Assembly (NCBI GenBank): GCA_965153285.1
Contig: OZ229114.1
Length of the DNA: 64,000 nt
Source of the DNA: Podarcis tiliguerta
Taxonomy: Eukaryota
Strand: one strand, 5' to 3'
A model generated the notes under the pieces. That model saw nothing but the letters and a program-made list of their open reading frames with translations, did no database searches and was not told the origin of the DNA. A program made the position numbers and the translations under genes. Shown in pieces: positions 6,701 to 64,000 of this stretch. The stretch's first letter is position 1. Each line of letters begins with the position of its first letter.

Positions 6701-9700
6701 TTCTTCACAATGGACTTATTTTAAATGCTTAAAGCTTTGTTATTTTAATATTCCCTCTGTAACAAATGTGGTTTTGGTTATCATTAAGGATTATTTAAAT
6801 TCTAAATTTAGATCTTAAAAACCTAGAACATGACAATAAGGTTTTAAAAGGTTTTCTCACCACCACTAAGTCAATCTAGATTACTAAAAATCTCCATACC
6901 CTCCATAGAACAGTAGTATGAATGCAGATACTATTTAAGGCTGAGATGAAATTAAAATACTTTGCTCAAAGTTCAGTTGAGATAAAAAATGCTTGACTAA
7001 TAGACAATTATAAAATCAAAACAAGTAAAAATACACATTAGATAGAAAAGATGTAGTTAAAATGGGCAAAATATATAAACTGGCAGCAGCTCACCGTCTA
7101 AAGCTTCTTTTAATTCATCTTTGGTCCAGGCAACTTCTGTCATCAGTAGTCGGAGGTAATACATGGCATGCTGGTGTGGTTGTTCAGCTCGGAAGTTATT
7201 AAGCGACCGCATGTACTAACAAGGTTAAAATTAAATAATGGTTAAGAAATGAAGATTTGCAATGAACGTTGCCTGATGTTTTGATGTTCTATATTCAAAT
7301 TATATGGTCAGATAAAAGAAATAAAGATGGGCAGGGCTCCCTCTTAACTGAGATCATATCATAGTTTGAAGCTGGATCGCAAATCATTATTCATCCATGA
7401 TTAAAAGGTTCCCCTGACTAGCACTCATCAACCAATACTGGGGCCAATAAAACACATCAGGAATTTGCCTGTAATTGATGAGCAACTGGCAGGTGGAGGA
7501 GAAGAAGCATGGGATCTTGTGGTCTGTTCCTAATCTCTGAACCAGCACTAAGGGATGGGAACAGAATATATGTGCTGGCTAGAGGAAGAGAACTACAGAA
7601 AGACAGAGTCATAGCTGAAAAAGCCCTCACTAAATTTAATTGACTTAAATCTTATGGATGACTACTCTGAAGTCACATTATTTTCAAATGGAGCTTACTC
7701 TCAGGCAAGTGTGCAAATGACGACAGTCCAAGTGTGGCACCAATCATTGCCCCCAGCAGTTTTATACCTTTCTGCAGGCATATGTACATTCCCTACACAT
7801 TGTTCATAACTTGTTTGAACTTTTAGGCTCCTGTACACCCCCTCCTGCCTTCAAGGAATGAAATATTGCATGTATGGTGTCTTCCCCTGCTTGATATTCT
7901 GATTTATAAGGATCAAAGTCAAGTTCAAGATAGCTTACCGCCTCCTTGATAATTTCAAATCTTTTTTCATCAATCTCAAAGGTAGCCATTTTCTCAACAA
8001 TCTTCTTGAGCAGGATATGCTGCTTGTCATTGTAACCTTTTACGGAAAGCTATAGGAAAAGGATATATAAGCTGTTATGTGTTTGAAATATTCTGTTTTC
8101 TAGAATTCTAGATTGTCCATCAAAGCAGTAAACAGCAACTTCTTAACACTGGGAAGCATTCTCCCTTATTTCACCAGAAATACTAAGGTTTGCCCTTTAC
8201 TACATCGAAGTCTATGTGTGATATTATTACTGCTTTACTTTTTCCCAGGGCTTAACATCTTCTTTTACAATTACAAACCAAAATTATAGTGGAAAACCAA
8301 TATTGTTCCATGCTGCAAAGCAATGCTTCAAACGTCAGGGAACAGAAAACGGAATGAAATGTTGTTGCAATTTCCCAGGATTAAAATCAGAAAAGCAATA
8401 TGCTAATTGGAATGAAAAGAGTAGTTTATCATTCTTCTTCCAAACGAAGAATAAAAGTATCCTAGGAACCCAAATCTAGAAAAGAATATAGGAAAGAAAA
8501 ACTTCTGTTCCATAGTTAATAAAGCAGAAGAGTCCATTATATACTGATTTTTAAGAAGTAGGGACTTACAAATGTTTAAGACATCAAGATGACAGGCTCA
8601 TAAAATCATTGCATAACTCGGTTGACCACCATACACACAAGGCTGTATAGAACGCAGTGCCAACTGGGTGCTGCTTGTGCAATGTGACTTCAGTTTCCTC
8701 TCCCTTTCCTGCCCCACCCCAACATGCTGCACAGGCTTCTCCCCCCTTCTGGAGCTTACTCTGAAGGTGTATAGGGAGCTAGAGGGGACAGGAGAAGAAG
8801 AAAAAAGAGGATTTGCAGGTACTGATGACCAGCAGCATCTGCAAAGCTCCTTGCGCATATAAAGGATAAAACCTTTGTTTTAGCAACACCTTGCTGCCTG
8901 CAAGATGCACCTACTCACCTGTCATTTGTGATGTCTGGTGACTGGTATGTGGGAGGCTCTGCCAACCTTGCAAACTAAGCCACTGAGGCAGATCCTAATA
9001 AGGATCTGGCCTATGAAGTCAAAAGGGCTCCCCAACCCCTGTGCTACATGATGAAAGAAATTAGAACGGACTTGACTCATATTGACTAGATCCCAGGTTG
9101 CAGTCTGAAAACATAACACCTTGGCAACCTTGCTGATGCTAAATAGGTCTGATCAGGAGAGAGGCTGCTGAACAACACTTTGTAAACCACACCGAGTTCC
9201 ATGATGGAAAAAATGGCAAGCTACAAATGTAAATAAGCAAAAATACTATAAAACTGTGCTGTTTCCCCCCAGCCAATTTTAGCACTGAAACCAGTACATT
9301 AAAAAGCATGCTTTTTAGCAGCCCCATGTTTCGTCAGATAAAGAAAATATATGACCTACGCAGAGATTACTGGAGTCTTAAAAGTAAGTGCAATGTTTTG
9401 GGAAAGTTTAGGAAAGAAATAGTCATGTACTCATGTGTTATATAAGGAGCCTGTTTCACAAGTCATCTTGATCCTGAAATGCAGTCTTCTCTTACCAATG
9501 ATGCAGTTAGTAATATTTAGTGAATTGCATGTCTGATGAAGGTGGTTCTGGCACACAAAAGCTCATGCTGCAATAAATGTATTAGTCTTCCAGATGCCCT
9601 GCAGTACTTTGGTGGTGGCTGGGGGTTTTTATTTTTTTAAGTATACATTAGGATCTAAATGACTGAAAGCCAGCAGAACTCCATGTTTAACTAAAAACAT

Positions 9701-12700
9701 AGCAAGTCTTTCAAGGTTACTATACTATACAAATGAGTAAGAAATGCAGATCAGTAATGCATCAGCACACTTCTCAGTCATAAAAAAAACCATTCCAATC
9801 ATGGCCAAACCATTCAATAAATGGTTATAAAACTGCACAAGTCTCACGCCCTTATGATAGGGATGCAAAGGACAAAACCAGGAGCCATTTTTCCAAGCAG
9901 CACTCAACTCTCACGCCATCTACTTTTTGCTTGTTCACCNNNNNNNNNNNNNNNNNNNNNNNNNNNNNNNNNNNNNNNNNNNNNNNNNNNNNNNNNNNNN
10001 NNNNNNNNNNNNNNNNNNNNNNNNNNNNNNNNNNNNNNNNNNNNNNNNNNNNNNNNNNNNNNNNNNNNNNNNNNNNNNNNNNNNNNNNNNNNNNNNNNNN
10101 NNNACTAACAAAAAAGAAAAACAAAACAAAAGGATGCTTTGATACTTCAAGGAGCGACACGGTAATGGATGAAGAAACATGACTGAAGAGTATGTATATG
10201 CAGCCTCATAACCAATATTCTCGGGAGTGAAACACTGGGAATTTGATTTCTCTTTCGGAATTTGATTTCTCATTGCAAATATTCTGGGGAATGACGTAAA
10301 ATGAAGTGCAAAAATTGCTGAATGCGAATGGAAATGTTGAAGACTCCAGAAATTTCAAATTATGAGAAAGTATAGCTAGAAATCAAGGTTGAAAAAGAAA
10401 CTGAAAAAAACAGGTTCTCAATTGGAAAAGCCATTGAAAAATTGCTTCCAGCAAATCAATTTTTTTCCTTCTGATTAGTGGAAGTAAATTTAAGGCTTTT
10501 AAGATTNNNNNNNNNNNNNNNNNNNNNNNNNNNNNNNNNNNNNNNNNNNNNNNNNNNNNNNNNNNNNNNNNNNNNNNNNNNNNNNNNNNNNNNNNNNNNN
10601 NNNNNNNNNNNNNNNNNNNNNNNNNNNNNNNNNNNNNNNNNNNNNNNNNNNNNNCCACGTAAGCAAATGGGCTGGAAGAAAATGTTGAAAGTAAAATATC
10701 TGCTGCAATTACTTCCCAGTTCTGCTAGATCCTCCATACTGGATCTCAAGGACACAGTAAAAAAGAAAATCCTGCTTCCTGTTATGAGAATATTAAGACA
10801 GTATGTGAACACAAACACATGGCTAAAGGGGAAAAGATTGATTTAACAATTCCATACTGAGACAGACACACACAGATGTATTACATCTATGTTAAATCTA
10901 CTGCATAAGATTACACAAAACCGTTTTTAGCCCACATTATTCTGAATTTGTTACAAAGACAAATGCTTACAAACAAGTACAAAACATATGTAAAACACTT
11001 AAAATATACAATGAGTTAAAAATCGCCACAGTGGATAAATCTAAAAGCTTGCCAAGTAGGACAGTCTCACACTTAACTTGCTTGTCATCAGGATTAAACC
11101 TCACTGAACACAGCTGCTGGTTTCACAAAATCAGGAAATAGCGCAGTTATAGGTTTGCTACCAAACCACTGGCATTTTCTATATTAGGCACAAAAATATC
11201 AAAGTTTTGTATTTAGCTATAGCACATAACGCTACCCTGATATATTTTTGCAATATCCCAATGAGGAAGAGTACGCTGCACAGACTTCCAAAGGTAAAGA
11301 CAACTCAAAGACTCAAGTCATGTTTCAACAATACTGCTTTGCACCAACATATTAAGAGTGACAAACCAGATTAAGAGCAGAAGTAATTTGTGTACAGTAT
11401 GGTCTAATATCTATTATGGATATATACATATAGCAGTTAAAAATATGAAATCATCAACATCGCCCAAGTAAATTGTTCACAAAGCAACATTTCTTACTGA
11501 AGAATTCTATCATAAGTAAAATACAAAAGTACAACAATATTCAGCATGTTAAAGCAAAATAATAATTATGGGGCAGAATAATGATTCAAAGAACAAAACA
11601 TTTAATTAAAACCATGCATCTCGTTTTGAAGAAAAATCAGAATGTTCTTTTAATAATGTGAAACAAGTGACTCTTTGCACAATGATTTCTGACATGCAAA
11701 CCAATGCTATTTATTCAGAAGTTAAGTTTCACTGGGTTCAATCAGACTTACTCCCAGAAATGTATGCGGCCTCAATATATGTTAAAACTCACTGGACAAT
11801 GTTGCATTTTCATATACATCTTATCTCAAGGCTATTATTGTAGAGACCCATCACAAGCAGAAACAACATAATCATTTTTAAAACCTTTTCAATACAAAAC
11901 TCATCAGAAGATAAAGAAGTTTGGGGGGGGGTGACTGCATTTTACTTAATATAGGAATTATCATTTCAAGATACATAACCACCCAAGTTTCTATCTATAA
12001 ACTCTCTTACAAAACTAAGCAGTACTGCAGTTCACATGCTTTCTCAAAAATCAAAATGGGACCATGAAATTAGCTAGCAATTATATTAAGTGTAAAAACC
12101 TAACTTACTTGGTTTTATCTTAAATTTCATTTTCAGTGCTGTAAACTGTTAAGTATGCTTCAACTTTAACAGGTAATTTGACTTCAAAACCAAGCAATTT
12201 CACCAAAGTAAGTTTTTAACTGGTCTATACAAATATCCCCAGCTCATAATGCTCAGCCTTCCTTATGAATTGAGCAGCATTACACTGGGAAATTATCAGG
12301 CTTATGAGCATATTTAGCTCATAAGCAGCTCTGGAACATATATTTTCTGTCTGAACGTTCAGCTGCTTTGGGAAAACTACACACTACATTCCAGACACGA
12401 CAGAAAACGGAGGCTTTGCAGAAAGGCACCCTGGTTGTTGCTAACCTTACAAGTAAGTTTATACTATAGGGATGGTGAGTCGAGGCTCACAGATTAGAAA
12501 GGTGTGCTTGGGCCCTCTTGAGATCCCAGTGACATTGAATCAAGAGTGCAACAGAGTTTCCAAATTGGGGTATGTGAGAGCTATTACCTGAGGGGGGGGA
12601 ATATTATTAGCAATGTTAGCAAATCACAATTTCAAATTGAGTAATTCATCATCACTAGATACAAAGGGAGACCTCTGTGGGTGATCAGTTGTACTGCACT

Positions 12701-24114: not shown

Positions 24115-27100
24115 AGTTAAGTTCCAATGCTAATCCATTGTAAATTGATTATATATTAAAAGCAGCTCCCAAAAAGTTTGGCATTCTTACCTCGTCCTAG
24201 AACACAAACAGCCATTAAATTTGATGAATAATAAGTGGAGTGAAACTTCAATAACTCTTGTCTTACATCTATTCCTTCTTGGTTTGGTCTAGTTTCCAAA
24301 GTGAATTTGCTTCCTACAGTACATAAATAAAAAGAAGGATGTGTTACAATAAGAGCCATGACTGGGTAAATGTGCTCAGATCTGTAAAAACTGTTAATCC
24401 CTGCAATCACAAGAGGCGATACTGCACATATCCCTCAAACAGATTACAGCATCTGGATTGTTTTATTTTACTACTACGTTTACACTCTCCATTTCCTCCA
24501 ATGAGCTCAGGTGGCATACATGGTTCTCCGCACCCCCTAACTTTATTCTCACAAAAACAAATGATGGGCATTGTGCATGCAGATCCTATTTATATTTCTA
24601 TCACATGATGGTACTTCTATCGAGTGCAAGATGTTTATCAAATTTCCTGCTTTCATGATTTCAGCAAGACCATTTGTGGCTCAGCTTGAATAGCTTGGAG
24701 TTAGGAGAATTGAAATCTGGAATTGTGTTCTCAAAGGATTGCTTCTACAAATCCTTTTTCTAAACTTTGATTTATTTTAACAGCTTTTATACACACATCG
24801 TACAGTATCCATCACTTATCTCTTTTCCTAAGACTTCCCAATCCATCTCTCTGTGACATTCTAGGGAAATCTTGATCTACTGCATATCCTGATATTTCAC
24901 CCATTATTAGTTCAAGTCTTCCTGTTTTGATGTTATCTGCTGCTCATATGTCAACTCCTACTTGTAGGTTAAATTGTGTATTTTACCCTCTAAAATAATC
25001 TCCAAAACACTTATCTTTATCTCATCCTTATTCCTTAGTTTCACAGTCATGGTTACTAATGCTATGTATTCTATCAATCTGTTTTGCCAAATTTCCATCG
25101 TGGGTATTTCTTCTTCTTTCCGTTTTTCCGCATATACTGTTCTAGCTGCAGCGGTTGTGTACAGAAAAATACTGAGTGCCTTTTTTGGAACTGGAATATC
25201 ATCACCTATTATCCCTAATAGAAAGGCCCCCGGTTTTTTGAGAAACGTGAGTTTTAGAATCTTATTTAATTCTGTGTGGACCATTTCCCAATACTCTCCA
25301 GCATATTTACATGGATCAGGGTTCCCTCCATCTCGTGGCACCTCCAGAATAAATTAGACCCTTTTTTATACATTTTCACTAATTTGCAAATCCTATTCTG
25401 ATATTCATAATATAAAGGTTGTGTAGAGCAGAAATACAGGTATGTTAATCATACAATTAGTGTTGTGCCTAACAACAAATGCAGTGTATATCCTCATAGT
25501 TCATGGACATGTTCAGGCCACCGTCAGATATAGTGTTATTGAGTCAACAAAGCATGGTTTGTTGGAGTAGAAATGAGCAGTTAGCTCAAGCGCTTCCTCC
25601 TCCCACCCTTGGCCTTAGATAAGACTTTCGGGATAATTAAAACAGTTTCCCCACGATACCTGACTTAGGAAACTGGTTTAAGTCAGGGTGGATGTCACTC
25701 ACTTGACATCATGTGGCAACTTCAAATGGGCTGCCTGCCAGTGTCTATCTCCCAGTTCTTATTAATCAATAATAATTTTCTAAATTACTTCACTTTTTTC
25801 TGGCAGTAAAAAAGGAAAATCAAGACTAGAGTTTCTAATTTCCAGTAAGCTGACTCTAACATTGCTGCTATGCAAAATAAAGCTAAAACACAGCATTCTG
25901 GGTTGATGAAATGCAGTTATGAAAACAAGCATAATGCAAGAAATCGTAAAATAAGTGAGGTGAAGATAATGTTCTAAAAATAATGAGAACAGGGATTTAA
26001 AGAATGATCAGCTCAATTCACAAATAGTAGTAATGAATATAGACAAGCACGAATAAGAAAAACCATTCAAGATACATAAACAAATGGTCTTATTCAATTT
26101 ATGATGAAAGCACAGTAGTTCAGGTCTCCGTACACTTTCATTGTGAATTACCACCCTTACAGAATAATTCAACATTGCACTTTCCTGATTGCTTGCCAGA
26201 CAGAATGATCCCCCCTCTCTTCTCCTCCCCATGCCCTGTTATCCTGACCCTCCAGAGCAGATCTGGGGGTTGTGGAGGGGGAGGAAAGCCCTGTTGCACT
26301 AATTGGAGTCCTTGCACTGGCTTCCGCTAGCACACTAGGTTAGTGGAATCTGACTCAACGTCTGCATTTCACATGGCAGAGTATCTGATGCTGCTATACC
26401 TCTTTAAGCTTCTGTTTTCTTTTTTTATTTTAAAGACTGCAACTACATTTGAAAATAAGAGTTTTTGAAATCATGTTTAAGACAAAAAGTGACCATTATC
26501 AGAAAGGGTTCTTGCTACCACCATTTTAAACCTAATACGTTCACCAGAGGTAATAACACTGTAATAAAAACGGACGGAATAAAACCGTAGGAGTGAGAGC
26601 TTGCATGCTGCTCTCACTTAACCAGACTTAAACCCTTAAATTCTCAGGAATTGCTTTGTTTTCTGGTTTAAGAAGCAGTGCTGGGAGAGGTTTCTTCCAC
26701 CAGTACAGCTATATAATACTTTTTCCACACTTATAAAGAAATATTTCTTCTAGTGTGGCAGCACTCACACTTTGAAACTCTCTACCCAAGTACTCTTTTA
26801 TGATCTGCTTAAAACATTTTTGTTTACGCAAGCCCATCCATGTAGATGTTGACATGCTTTAATCTCTCTTCAGTCTACTGTTAATTTTAATTATCTTTTA
26901 AATGTTTTTAATTACAGTATTTATTCTTAAACTGCTTTTTATTGGTAATTTTAATACTTCTTGTAAACCACTTATAGGCTTTGTAATTATCAACTGGTAT
27001 ATAAATTCTGTTAAATAAATGTGACACATTCTCAGTTGCTTTTAAAGGTGAATCAAATGCAGTAAACCACCATGTGTAAAGGCTACATCATCAAATAATT

Positions 27101-30100
27101 TCCATACAACATGTTTTTATTTTAACACATTCTTAAAAAAATAATAATTAGATTTTCCATCATACAATTTAAGAGAAAAAGAGAAAAAAATACATAACAG
27201 AAAAGAAACATTAATTCATTATACATTAAATCATTATACAATATCCAAAAAAGAAGAAGAAAAAGAACATAAACAAAATAAAATGAACCCACCACCCTGT
27301 TTAACTTCCCTCCACCACTACTCGTCTTCTCTAGAATCAATTTTACCCTTATCATTGCGTTCTGGTTGTTTTTATTTTCTCTATATACATACATATGTCA
27401 CTGATAATTTATTGTTTTGATGCATTTACATTCTTAGTCTAAGCATATTAGCATGTCTTTTTTGGAGCAGTATTTTGCCATATCATAATCAAAGCATTGC
27501 CATTCATTTTTCAGTTTTTGATTCGACTGCTGTCGTATGGATGCAGTTAGTTTAGCCAATTTTAAATATTCATTTAATTTGAAAATCCATTCCTCCTTGG
27601 TAGGTAATTCTTTAGCTTTCCATTTAGGTGCTATTACTATTCTACCTGCGGTGGTTGCATATAAGAAAATTCTTTTTTTCGATTTCAGTATTTCTTTCCC
27701 TAATAGGCCCAGTAGGTAAGCCTCTGGTTTTTTCATTAGTGGGATTTTAAGCATTTTTTTCAAGTCCTCATGTATTTCTCCCCAGAAGTACTTAATTGGG
27801 GTGCAGCTCTGACTTTAATCTTCTCATATGTTGTTAAAGCCCTCCAGGTCTAATAAATCTGCTTTTTCCAAAGTGATCCATTCTTCCAGCCATACAAGGC
27901 ATTCTGCTTCATAATATATTTCTTCCAATATAAAATAATGCCTTGGAGCCTCACAGCACAGCACAGTTTAAAGGGACTCCCCAATCGAAAGCAGATCATG
28001 TGCAAATGTAATGGAAGATTAAATACCTGTTCCAAATTTACTGAAGGGGTGATTGGGATTTCCAGTAGCCTTTTCCAGCTGAAATAGTCTCCAAGCATCA
28101 TTCATTAAATTCTTCTCATGCTCAGAATCAACAGCATTCACTTCTCTGTCTTTGCAGCTTTCATCAAACAGAGGGCACAAGAAAAACTGAGCAAACCTGC
28201 AAGAAAAAAAGTCAGATTTCCCAAATCAATGTTTCGACAATTAAATTGTTGATAGTTTAACACATGAAATTCATGTTCAGTGTGGAGAAGCACACAATTT
28301 ATTATCAGTTCAGGATAGGATTTGCCCACCAGGTCTGAGCCTTTTGTCTTCAATGCTCTGGACAGATGCCCATAATTTAATTAAAAATTTTGTTCACCTG
28401 GAGCCACTCTGTTGCTAAGTAGTCTCATCACCAAGTGGATGTTCTAATCTAGTGCAATTTACTATAATGACCTTTTTAGCAGACAGGACACAATCTATGA
28501 GCAAGATACCATCAGCTGCCTTGTTTGCTACTTCAGATCTGCTTCTTCTTGCTGTTGTCTTATGAACTAGCCACTCAAAGTTTCCTTAGCAGAGGCCTGC
28601 TGTGTGTCTGTGAAAAAAGAGCTATTGGGACCTGCTCTACATAGACATACTGAGGACCCTTCCAAAATCACCAAAGCTAATGTTACTAAGCCTCTCCTTG
28701 GCCCTCAACATGAACCAAAGAACTTTTTTTAAAAAAGTAAAAGAACACAGACCATGAAATGAGTGAGGGCTGTGCAACCTGTTAATTACTTTGTCTTTGG
28801 AAAAAAAATCATGCTAAATTACCTGGGAGTAAGCCCCACCAAATTCAACTTACTTCTGAGTAGACATACCAGAGATTGCACTGTTATTTTGCTAACTCTG
28901 AAGTAAAATCAAATATACAGTATGCAGCAGTAGCTTGAATATCCCTATTTTCACCAAATATAAAATTCCACAGAGAGAAGAGCCTTTGAGAGTCAGCTGA
29001 TAAATATGCAACATATGCTGAGAGTGTAAGCAGAATATATTTATAGAACAAACATATGTGAGGTTCCTATGCAACACTTTCATGGTTATGTAAAGTAACA
29101 GCAAAATGATAAACCATATGAAGTTTTTAAGACACTCGCCATACTGTTGATGAGTCTCTCCTCACTTAGAACCTATTTTGATATACTACCGCAAGGGCTC
29201 ATTCCATATGTTTTCTTTTATCACTGTTATTCCCAAGATGTTAAAAGTATTTCAGTAATTTAGTCTTTACAATTGTATTAAAGTCATTATTATAAAAAAG
29301 CAGAAGTAATAAATACACTAAATAATGTTATCATCTGGTAGGACTCTCATGTTAATTGTGCTTGCTGGAAAGACAAAACCAAACCAATATATTTAATCAT
29401 TAATAGATATGCTCACCTGTCCAGGGCACCTTCCAAGTGTTCATGTGATACATCAAAATAAAAGTTGGTGTGTTCTCCACTGGTAAAAGCATTTGAACTT
29501 CCTGCGTGTTCACTGAGAAATTGGCTGTACTCATTTTCTTTTGGGTATTTCTCAGTTCCCAAAAAAAGCATATGTTCACAAAAATGGCTTAACCCAGCAA
29601 TGTTAGGGGGATCAGATAATGACCCTATGAATAGGAGAAATGGGCAGAAATAGAGTCTTACTTTAAAAGCTGATACACAAATTCAGTATAAAGCAATCAA
29701 ATCATCCAGAACAATCAACATTTTAACACTTTTCTCTGGGTCAGAGAAATCATCTTAGTGATTATGACTGCAAATATTTAGGAAATTATATAGCTCTATT
29801 TCCCTTTGCAGAAAAGCTAGGCTGGAATGCACCTGCTAGTATACAGCTGCTTCATACTAACTTTAGAGAAGCTATAGGAAAGGTGTTAGCTGGAAATCAG
29901 AGGCAAGTGGTTTATGTGAGCACCCCAAGCAGTTCAAACTACAAAGAAAAGATATTTGATAAAACAGGACATACATATGTAACCATTTTGGTTTTTGGTT
30001 TTTAATCAGAACATCTAGGTAACAACCATGTTCTAATTTCATGTTGGCTTAACATGCAAATACATCATTTTCAGGCCTACTATCTGACTTCTCAAACATA

Positions 30101-51360: not shown

Positions 51361-63738
<12,378 letters not shown>

Positions 63739-64000
63739 GTTAACAAAATTCACACTCCCAAGTTCCCCCCTCACTAGCACTTGAATGGGCAATACGGTTA
63801 TAACGTCATGATTATAACTTACGCTGTCAGCGCTGCATAGGTTTTCAGGCCGCTTTTCAAAATCTTGAAGTGCATCCCAAACCATAAGAATGATCTGTTA
63901 ATGATTTGGGATAAAAGGGGAAGAGAATAGTCTACTTCTCTCATGAAGGGCATCCAGAGGGGACTGAAGCTTCAACATCCCACCCCTTCCATCTCTCCTT

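What the first reader, a model, noticed from the sequence alone, without database searches (positions are those of the whole stretch)
10181..10207. Intronic element antisense to the core shared by both IDE exon-15 variants: candidate competing RNA-structure switch
Seen: between the two exon-15 copies, the plus strand (antisense to IDE) reads GAG TAT GTA TAT GCA GCC at 10188-10205, i.e. E-Y-V-Y-A-A, preceded by gactgaa. The pre-mRNA therefore carries GGCUGCAUAUACAUACUC about 83 nt upstream of the second acceptor. Recalled knowledge: IDE exon 15a encodes LNEYAYAA and 15b LKEYTYAA, so this element would be nearly complementary to the middle of either exon (expected at about 10595-10578 and 10028-10011, both hidden in N). 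Inference: pairing with 15a would loop out its 5' splice site, and pairing with 15b would loop out its 3' splice site. One element would thus silence one exon at a time, similar to docker/selector systems (Dscam1, Ate1) but with exonic targets. An ADAR editing-complementary sequence is an alternative role. I do not know of this being described for IDE.
Basis: partly seen in the sequence, partly recalled or inferred. Interest (0 to 1): 0.8.

Follow-up and report, generated by a model that had tools for sequence, protein, structure and literature searches.

The report
Antisense exon-like 18-mer in IDE intron
A short stretch in the intron between the two alternative copies of exon 15 of the insulin-degrading enzyme gene reads, on the opposite strand, like a piece of that exon. 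Every test that could be run puts it at the level of a chance resemblance, and its proposed role as an RNA switch could not be tested because the exon letters are masked.

Summary
The letters are there. GAGTATGTATATGCAGCC sits at 10188-10205 on the + strand, antisense to IDE, 83 nt upstream of the acceptor of the second exon-15 copy. The gene model is also right: exon 15a is under the N run 10507-10654 and exon 15b under 9940-10103.

The claimed pairing with the exon cores could not be checked. Those letters are masked, and I did not fill them.

- **Bound on the pairing:** There are 11-17 (15a) or 10-16 (15b) pairs of 18. With this gene's codon usage the expectation is 13.0 and 12.2.
- **Background:** 17 visible IDE exons reach 12-14 of 18 against their own flanking introns.
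- **Control:** an equally good antisense peptide look-alike lies beside another IDE exon (6926-6946), and its nucleotides match poorly there.
- **Chance rate:** about 0.03-0.07 for this intron.
- **Composition:** the core is an alternating purine/pyrimidine tract.

Most likely this is a chance resemblance (about 0.7). A real switch remains possible (about 0.1).

The parts
10188..10205 (-). The 18-mer. The + strand reads GAGTATGTATATGCAGCC (E-Y-V-Y-A-A) and the pre-mRNA reads GGCUGCAUAUACAUACUC. Its core, 10190-10202, is an alternating purine/pyrimidine tract.
10181..10207 (-). The span given in the finding: the 18-mer plus gactgaa on one side and tc on the other.
10507..10654 (-). N run over exon 15a. 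It was not filled. The exon starts at 10671, its first 17 letters (10655-10671) are visible, and the acceptor ag is at 10673-10672.
   Evidence: the Pfam profile gap between exons 14 and 16 equals one exon
9940..10103 (-). N run over exon 15b. It was not filled. The first exon base is 10104, the acceptor ag is at 10106-10105, and the pyrimidine tract is at 10107-10133.
9758..9781 (-). A visible partner arm of the element. The inverted repeat with 10179-10202 is 24 nt long and 75% complementary. The two arms flank exon 15b.
   Evidence: I3; duplex -23.6 kcal/mol, not above background (share 0.147)
6926..6946 (+). Control coincidence. The antisense strand reads R-Y-Y-L-R-L-R beside the exon (core 7096-7215) that encodes M-Y-Y-L-R-L-L. 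Only 8 of 15 nucleotides agree.
10160..10252 (.). The block covered by the only RNA read pair laid. The pair is 95-99% alike and both reads run on into sequence unlike the intron.

Best explanation
This is ordinary intron sequence. A short alternating purine/pyrimidine tract (GTATGTATATGC), with GA on one side and AGCC on the other, happens to read E-Y-V-Y-A-A on the strand antisense to IDE. The exon motif it resembles (GAR TAY GCN TAY GCN GCN) is itself an alternating tract, so tracts of this kind look like it in either orientation. The element has no dedicated role in choosing between exon 15a and 15b. Shown: the letters, the gene model, the background rates and the upper bound of the pairing. 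Inferred: that the hidden third codon positions do not happen to fit.
For: The same scan on 17 visible IDE exons and 34 flanks finds one antisense hexapeptide look-alike of equal quality, at 6926-6946. Its nucleotides match only 8/15 there. That gives about 0.03-0.07 for this intron by chance. The codon-usage expectation is 13.05 and 12.17, and the longest possible run is 10. Visible exons reach 12-14/18, with best 24-mer duplexes of -13.6 to -25.9 kcal/mol (mean -20.0) against their flanks. The hypothetical duplex has a median of -14.4 (15a) and -13.0 (15b). The window holds 33 alternating R/Y runs of 12 nt or more, one per 2 kb. The intron does not fold better than shuffles (z = -1.1). It matches no Rfam family and has no second copy in the window. 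It shows no enrichment of YCAY, UCUU or GCAUG.
Against: The specific codon pattern occurs only once in the window, and it lies in the one intron and on the one strand where the hypothesis needs it. A p of about 0.05 is not nothing. The true exon letters were not seen, so a good fit is not excluded. Pre-mRNAs with mutually exclusive exons have an increased capacity for competing structures (PMC6071210).
Confidence: 0.7

Rival explanations
1. The element acts as a docking site that pairs alternately with the duplicated cores of exon 15a and 15b, which serve as exonic selectors. Each pairing loops out a splice site and silences one exon at a time.
For: The antisense match to E-Y-x-Y-A-A is unique in the window and sits between the two copies. 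The best-case duplex is -32.7 (15a) and -28.7 (15b) kcal/mol, above the background range. The layout resembles ATE1, where R3 in the middle intron pairs with R1 and R4 (PMC7797038). It also fits the duplication model of PMC6071210.
Against: No codon choice gives more than 10 contiguous pairs. The probability of beating background is 0.015 (15a) and 0.003 (15b) under the gene's codon usage. There are no conservation or RNA data. The core is low-complexity. By inference, the 15a core is transcribed about 370 nt before the element and the 15b core only after it. Pairing would then preferentially silence 15a, yet 15a is the canonical isoform in mammals (PMC7956289). All proven selectors are intronic.
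Confidence: 0.1
2. The element pairs with the visible arm at 9758-9781 in the next intron. The stem brackets exon 15b and favours its skipping.
For: The inverted repeat I3 is 24 nt long and 75% complementary. Its duplex is -23.6 kcal/mol, and the 30-nt element's best partner in the 1.9-kb intron lies there at -26.0.
Against: 14.7% of random 30-nt intron pieces find a partner at least as good in the same intron. One search found 78 inverted pairs in 6.2 kb. No conservation data were obtained.
Confidence: 0.05
3. The region is a relic of the intron sequence that was duplicated together with the exon. It may now act as a binding platform for splicing proteins upstream of exon 15b.
For: There is a weak direct similarity between the 33 nt just upstream of exon 15a and the element region upstream of 15b (local score 13 against shuffles of 10.1 +/- 1.6). 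Three YCAY and three UCUU/CUCU motifs lie in the 76 nt around it.
Against: The similarity is not significant (share 0.083) and not collinear with the exon starts. The motif counts are within background (shares 0.13 and 0.09).
Confidence: 0.07
4. The element is an editing-complementary sequence that forms the ADAR substrate with exon 15a or 15b.
For: The geometry is possible: an intronic partner a few hundred nt downstream of exon 15a. This rests on my own knowledge of GRIA2-type sites.
Against: The papers searched report no recoding site in IDE. The duplex is short at best, and no RNA/DNA comparison was possible.
Confidence: 0.03

Closest known systems
ATE1 exons 7a/7b: competing R1-R3 and R3-R4 pairings (PMC7797038)
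   Same: There are two mutually exclusive homologous exons. One element in the intron between them would pair with either of two look-alike partners.
   Different: In ATE1 the partners are intronic, immediately upstream of each exon. All elements are conserved across vertebrates and were proven with disruptive and compensatory mutants. Here the partners would be exonic and hidden, and neither conservation nor function is shown.
Dscam1 exon 6 docking site and selector sequences, and the duplication model for their origin (PMC6071210)
   Same: One docking element and several mutually exclusive selector pairings. A tandem exon duplication automatically yields two copies of whatever pairs with the docking site.
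   Different: Dscam1 selectors are intronic, and pairing activates the adjacent exon. The IDE element has at best 7+10 bp with a mismatch.
Editing-complementary sequences of ADAR targets (for example GRIA2; own knowledge)
   Same: An intronic stretch complementary to coding sequence of the neighbouring exon.
   Different: No editing site is known in IDE exon 15, and no A-to-G evidence was obtainable here.
IDE 15a/15b isoforms (reviewed in PMC7956289)
   Same: The same pair of alternative exons, with 15a canonical and 15b less active on insulin.
   Different: The papers I searched describe the isoforms but no cis-acting RNA mechanism.

Membership tests
Docking/selector (competing RNA structure) control of mutually exclusive exons | A cluster of homologous, mutually exclusive exons | tested here: inconclusive
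   There are two exon-sized N runs, each preceded by a visible acceptor. Exon 14 ends at Peptidase_M16_M profile position 159 and exon 16 starts at 210, so only one exon's worth is missing. The letters and the usage of both copies in this animal were not seen.
Docking/selector (competing RNA structure) control of mutually exclusive exons | One element complementary to two or more selector sequences, with a duplex stronger than background | not testable with these tools
   The selector letters are masked and were not filled. The bound is 11-17/18 (15a) and 10-16/18 (15b), with an expectation of 13.0 and 12.2 against a background of 12-14/18. P(dG at or below the best background value) is 0.015 and 0.003.
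Docking/selector (competing RNA structure) control of mutually exclusive exons | Both arms conserved across species, with compensatory changes | not tested
Docking/selector (competing RNA structure) control of mutually exclusive exons | Disruptive and compensatory mutations change and restore the exon choice | not testable with these tools
   This is a bench experiment.
ADAR editing-complementary sequence | A-to-G differences between RNA and DNA in the paired exon | not testable with these tools
   The exons are masked, only one RNA read pair was laid on the intron, and the papers searched report no IDE recoding site.
Exon-bracketing inverted repeat (looping-out stem) | Complementary arms in the two flanking introns, stronger than chance | tested here: not met
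   The I3 arms 10179-10202 and 9758-9781 form a duplex of -23.6 kcal/mol. The element's best value of -26.0 is matched by 14.7% of random intron 30-mers.

The most novel reading that the evidence does not exclude
The 18-mer is a docking site whose selectors are the duplicated coding cores of IDE exons 15a and 15b. This would be an ATE1-like competing-structure switch with exonic rather than intronic partners, and it would give the first cis mechanism for the choice between the two IDE isoforms.
Probability: 0.1. Interest if true: 0.65.

Novelty: not a real feature. Interest (0 to 1): 0.2.

Why it matters
If the switch were real, it would explain how cells choose between the fully active 15a form and the less active 15b form of the enzyme that clears insulin and amyloid-beta. 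It would also add exonic selectors to the known competing-structure mechanisms. As things stand, the value of this check is cautionary. A hexapeptide look-alike on the antisense strand says little about base pairing, because a third of the positions are free. Such look-alikes turn up about once per 30-odd exon flanks in this very gene.

Tried and rejected
- **DNA of related organisms:** Read laying on the N-free stretch 10104-10506 with three DNA runs laid no contigs.
- **RNA:** one read pair only, so neither editing nor intron use can be read.
- **Big protein search:** not used. The protein is not in doubt, and without that tool it would not have led to DNA.
- **Repeat or transposon origin:** there is no second copy of the intron in the window.
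- **Known RNA family:** none.
- **Local hairpin:** the intron folds no better than shuffles.
- **ATE1-like layout in the visible sequence:**
  - The regions upstream of 15a and 15b are only weakly alike (share 0.083).
  - The stem I19 (10434-10452 with 10671-10689, over the 15a acceptor) is -12.7 kcal/mol and within background (share 0.63).
- **Splicing-factor motifs:** no enrichment.
- **Whole-exon RNAduplex energies:** discarded, because duplexfold on long sequences sums the whole length.
- **Literature:** no RNA-structure mechanism for IDE exon 15 was found.

Full report
**What is there.**
- The + strand reads gactgaa at 10181-10187 and GAG TAT GTA TAT GCA GCC at 10188-10205. The minus-strand RNA therefore reads GGCUGCAUAUACAUACUC.
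- The window carries IDE on the minus strand. At least 17 exon cores are readable as conserved peptides. Exon by exon, they match Peptidase_M16, M16_M and M16_C.
- KIF11-like exons lie on the + strand from about 56.6 kb.
- The only N runs are 9940-10103 and 10507-10654.
- Exon 15a starts at 10671 behind a pyrimidine tract and cag. Its first 17 letters encode (S)PFAYV.
- Exon 15b starts at 10104 behind a 27-nt pyrimidine tract and ag at 10106-10105.
- Exon 14 ends at position 159 of the M16_M profile and exon 16 begins at 210. One exon's worth of protein is therefore missing, while two exon-sized stretches are masked.
The element lies 83 nt upstream of the second acceptor, and the cores fall at 10595-10578 and 10028-10011.

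**What I did not do.**
- I did not fill the N stretches or look their letters up anywhere.
- Read laying was confined to the N-free stretch 10104-10506, and it returned no loose-end letters.
Exons were searched one at a time, by reference.
- Two hits (P0054, P0055) are spliced, mammal-type pieces that could be human. They were printed with the other hits. I did not save, compare or search them further. The bound below was computed before they appeared.
- The big protein search was not used.

**Is the resemblance more than chance?**
- The exact 18-mer is unique in the window at up to 3 mismatches.
- The codon pattern of E-Y-x-Y-A-A occurs once and in none of 100 shuffles.
- All 12 one-wildcard codon patterns of the two recalled hexapeptides give only this hit on both strands.
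- However, any of about 43 hexapeptide windows of two exons would have caught the eye.
- I ran the same scan on the 17 visible exons, each against 450 nt of intron on either side. It found one antisense look-alike of equal quality. R-Y-Y-L-R-L-R at 6926-6946 lies beside the exon that encodes M-Y-Y-L-R-L-L, and only 8 of 15 nucleotides agree there.
- Scaled to this intron and two exon copies, that is about 0.06. A count from information content gives 0.03-0.07.
- The core 10190-10202 is an alternating purine/pyrimidine tract. The window holds 33 such tracts of 12 nt or more. The exon motif is of the same alternating kind, which makes look-alikes in either orientation more likely.

**How well could it pair?**

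I used only the peptides given in the finding and enumerated every synonymous coding.

| | Exon 15a | Exon 15b |
|---|---|---|
| Forced mismatches | one C-A in the middle | two |
| Watson-Crick pairs of 18 | 11-17 | 10-16 |
| Longest possible contiguous run, with or without G-U | 10 | 10 |
| Expected pairs under this gene's codon usage | 13.05 | 12.17 |
| P(15 or more pairs) | 0.09 | 0.02 |
| Median duplex energy, 24-nt motif against the element | -14.4 kcal/mol | -13.0 kcal/mol |
| Best-case duplex energy | -32.7 kcal/mol | -28.7 kcal/mol |
| P(better than the best background value) | 0.015 | 0.003 |

- Ordinary IDE exons reach 12-14 of 18 against their own flanks, with perfect runs of 7-11. 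Their best 24-mer duplexes run from -13.6 to -25.9 kcal/mol, with a mean of -20.0.
- The element therefore stands out only if four or more of the six hidden third positions happen to fit.

**Other evidence.**
- The intron folds no better than shuffles (z = -1.1).
- It matches no Rfam family and has no other copy in the window.
- The element has a visible partner at 9758-9781, across exon 15b. The duplex is -23.6 kcal/mol, but 14.7% of random intron 30-mers do as well.
- A stem over the 15a acceptor (I19) and a weak likeness between the regions upstream of the two exons are both within noise.
- Splicing-factor motifs are not enriched.
- Four related organisms hold 71-83% of the intron's sampled words, but none of their contigs was laid.
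- A single RNA read pair from one of these organisms covers 10160-10252. It then runs on into unlike sequence, which I cannot explain.

**Mechanism and comparison.**
- The closest known system is ATE1. There, R3 in the middle intron pairs with look-alike elements upstream of each exon. This was proven by conservation and by compensatory mutants (PMC7797038).
- The duplication model of PMC6071210 would make exonic selectors conceivable.
- None of the defining features could be met here. The arms are hidden, conservation is untested and function is untested.
- One inference argues against the model as stated. The 15a core is transcribed before the element and the 15b core after it. Pairing would therefore tend to silence 15a, which is the canonical form.
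- The papers I searched hold no RNA-structure mechanism or recoding site for IDE exon 15.

**Verdict.**
- I put a chance resemblance at about 0.7 and the proposed switch at about 0.1.
- Interest is 0.2 as it stands, and about 0.65 if the pairing and its conservation were shown.

Noticed in passing
window 6926-6946 (+), beside exon core 7096-7215 (-): The antisense strand reads R-Y-Y-L-R-L-R next to the exon that encodes M-Y-Y-L-R-L-L. This is the same kind of coincidence as the finding. Only 8/15 nucleotides agree, so no pairing is implied.
   Followed up: yes
window 10160-10252: The only RNA read pair laid (organism D, 95-99% alike) covers this block, which includes the element. Both reads continue for 20 or more letters unlike the intron. 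It could be a copy elsewhere in that genome, a rearranged intron or a rare spliced piece. The flanking splice signals are poor.
   Followed up: partly
window 10205-10294: There are small local duplications directly beside the element. A 26-nt repeat sits at 10205-10230 and 10269-10294 (81% alike). A tandem pair GGAATTTGATTTCTC sits at 10238-10255 and 10257-10274.
   Followed up: no
window 9940-10103 and 10507-10654: Of about 19 IDE exons in the window, all highly conserved as protein, only the two exon-15 copies are masked. Each mask ends 20 nt past the presumed donor. If the masking followed nucleotide likeness to human, it would hint at unusual nucleotide conservation of the two alternative exons. 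I cannot tell which reason applies.
   Followed up: no
window 56659-63774 (+): Kinesin-motor exons lie on the + strand (for example a P-loop peptide [13 protein letters not shown] at about 56.8 kb). This is presumably KIF11, head to head with IDE. GC-rich stretches lie at 42-44 kb and 50-52 kb.
   Followed up: no
window 24961-25353 and 27437-27814 (-): Two long ORF pieces in an IDE intron have similar peptides to each other. They look like fragments of one retroelement family.
   Followed up: no
window 54700-55400: A GC-rich stretch has long overlapping ORFs on both strands and recurring peptide motifs, which suggests a tandem repeat between IDE and the kinesin gene.
   Followed up: no
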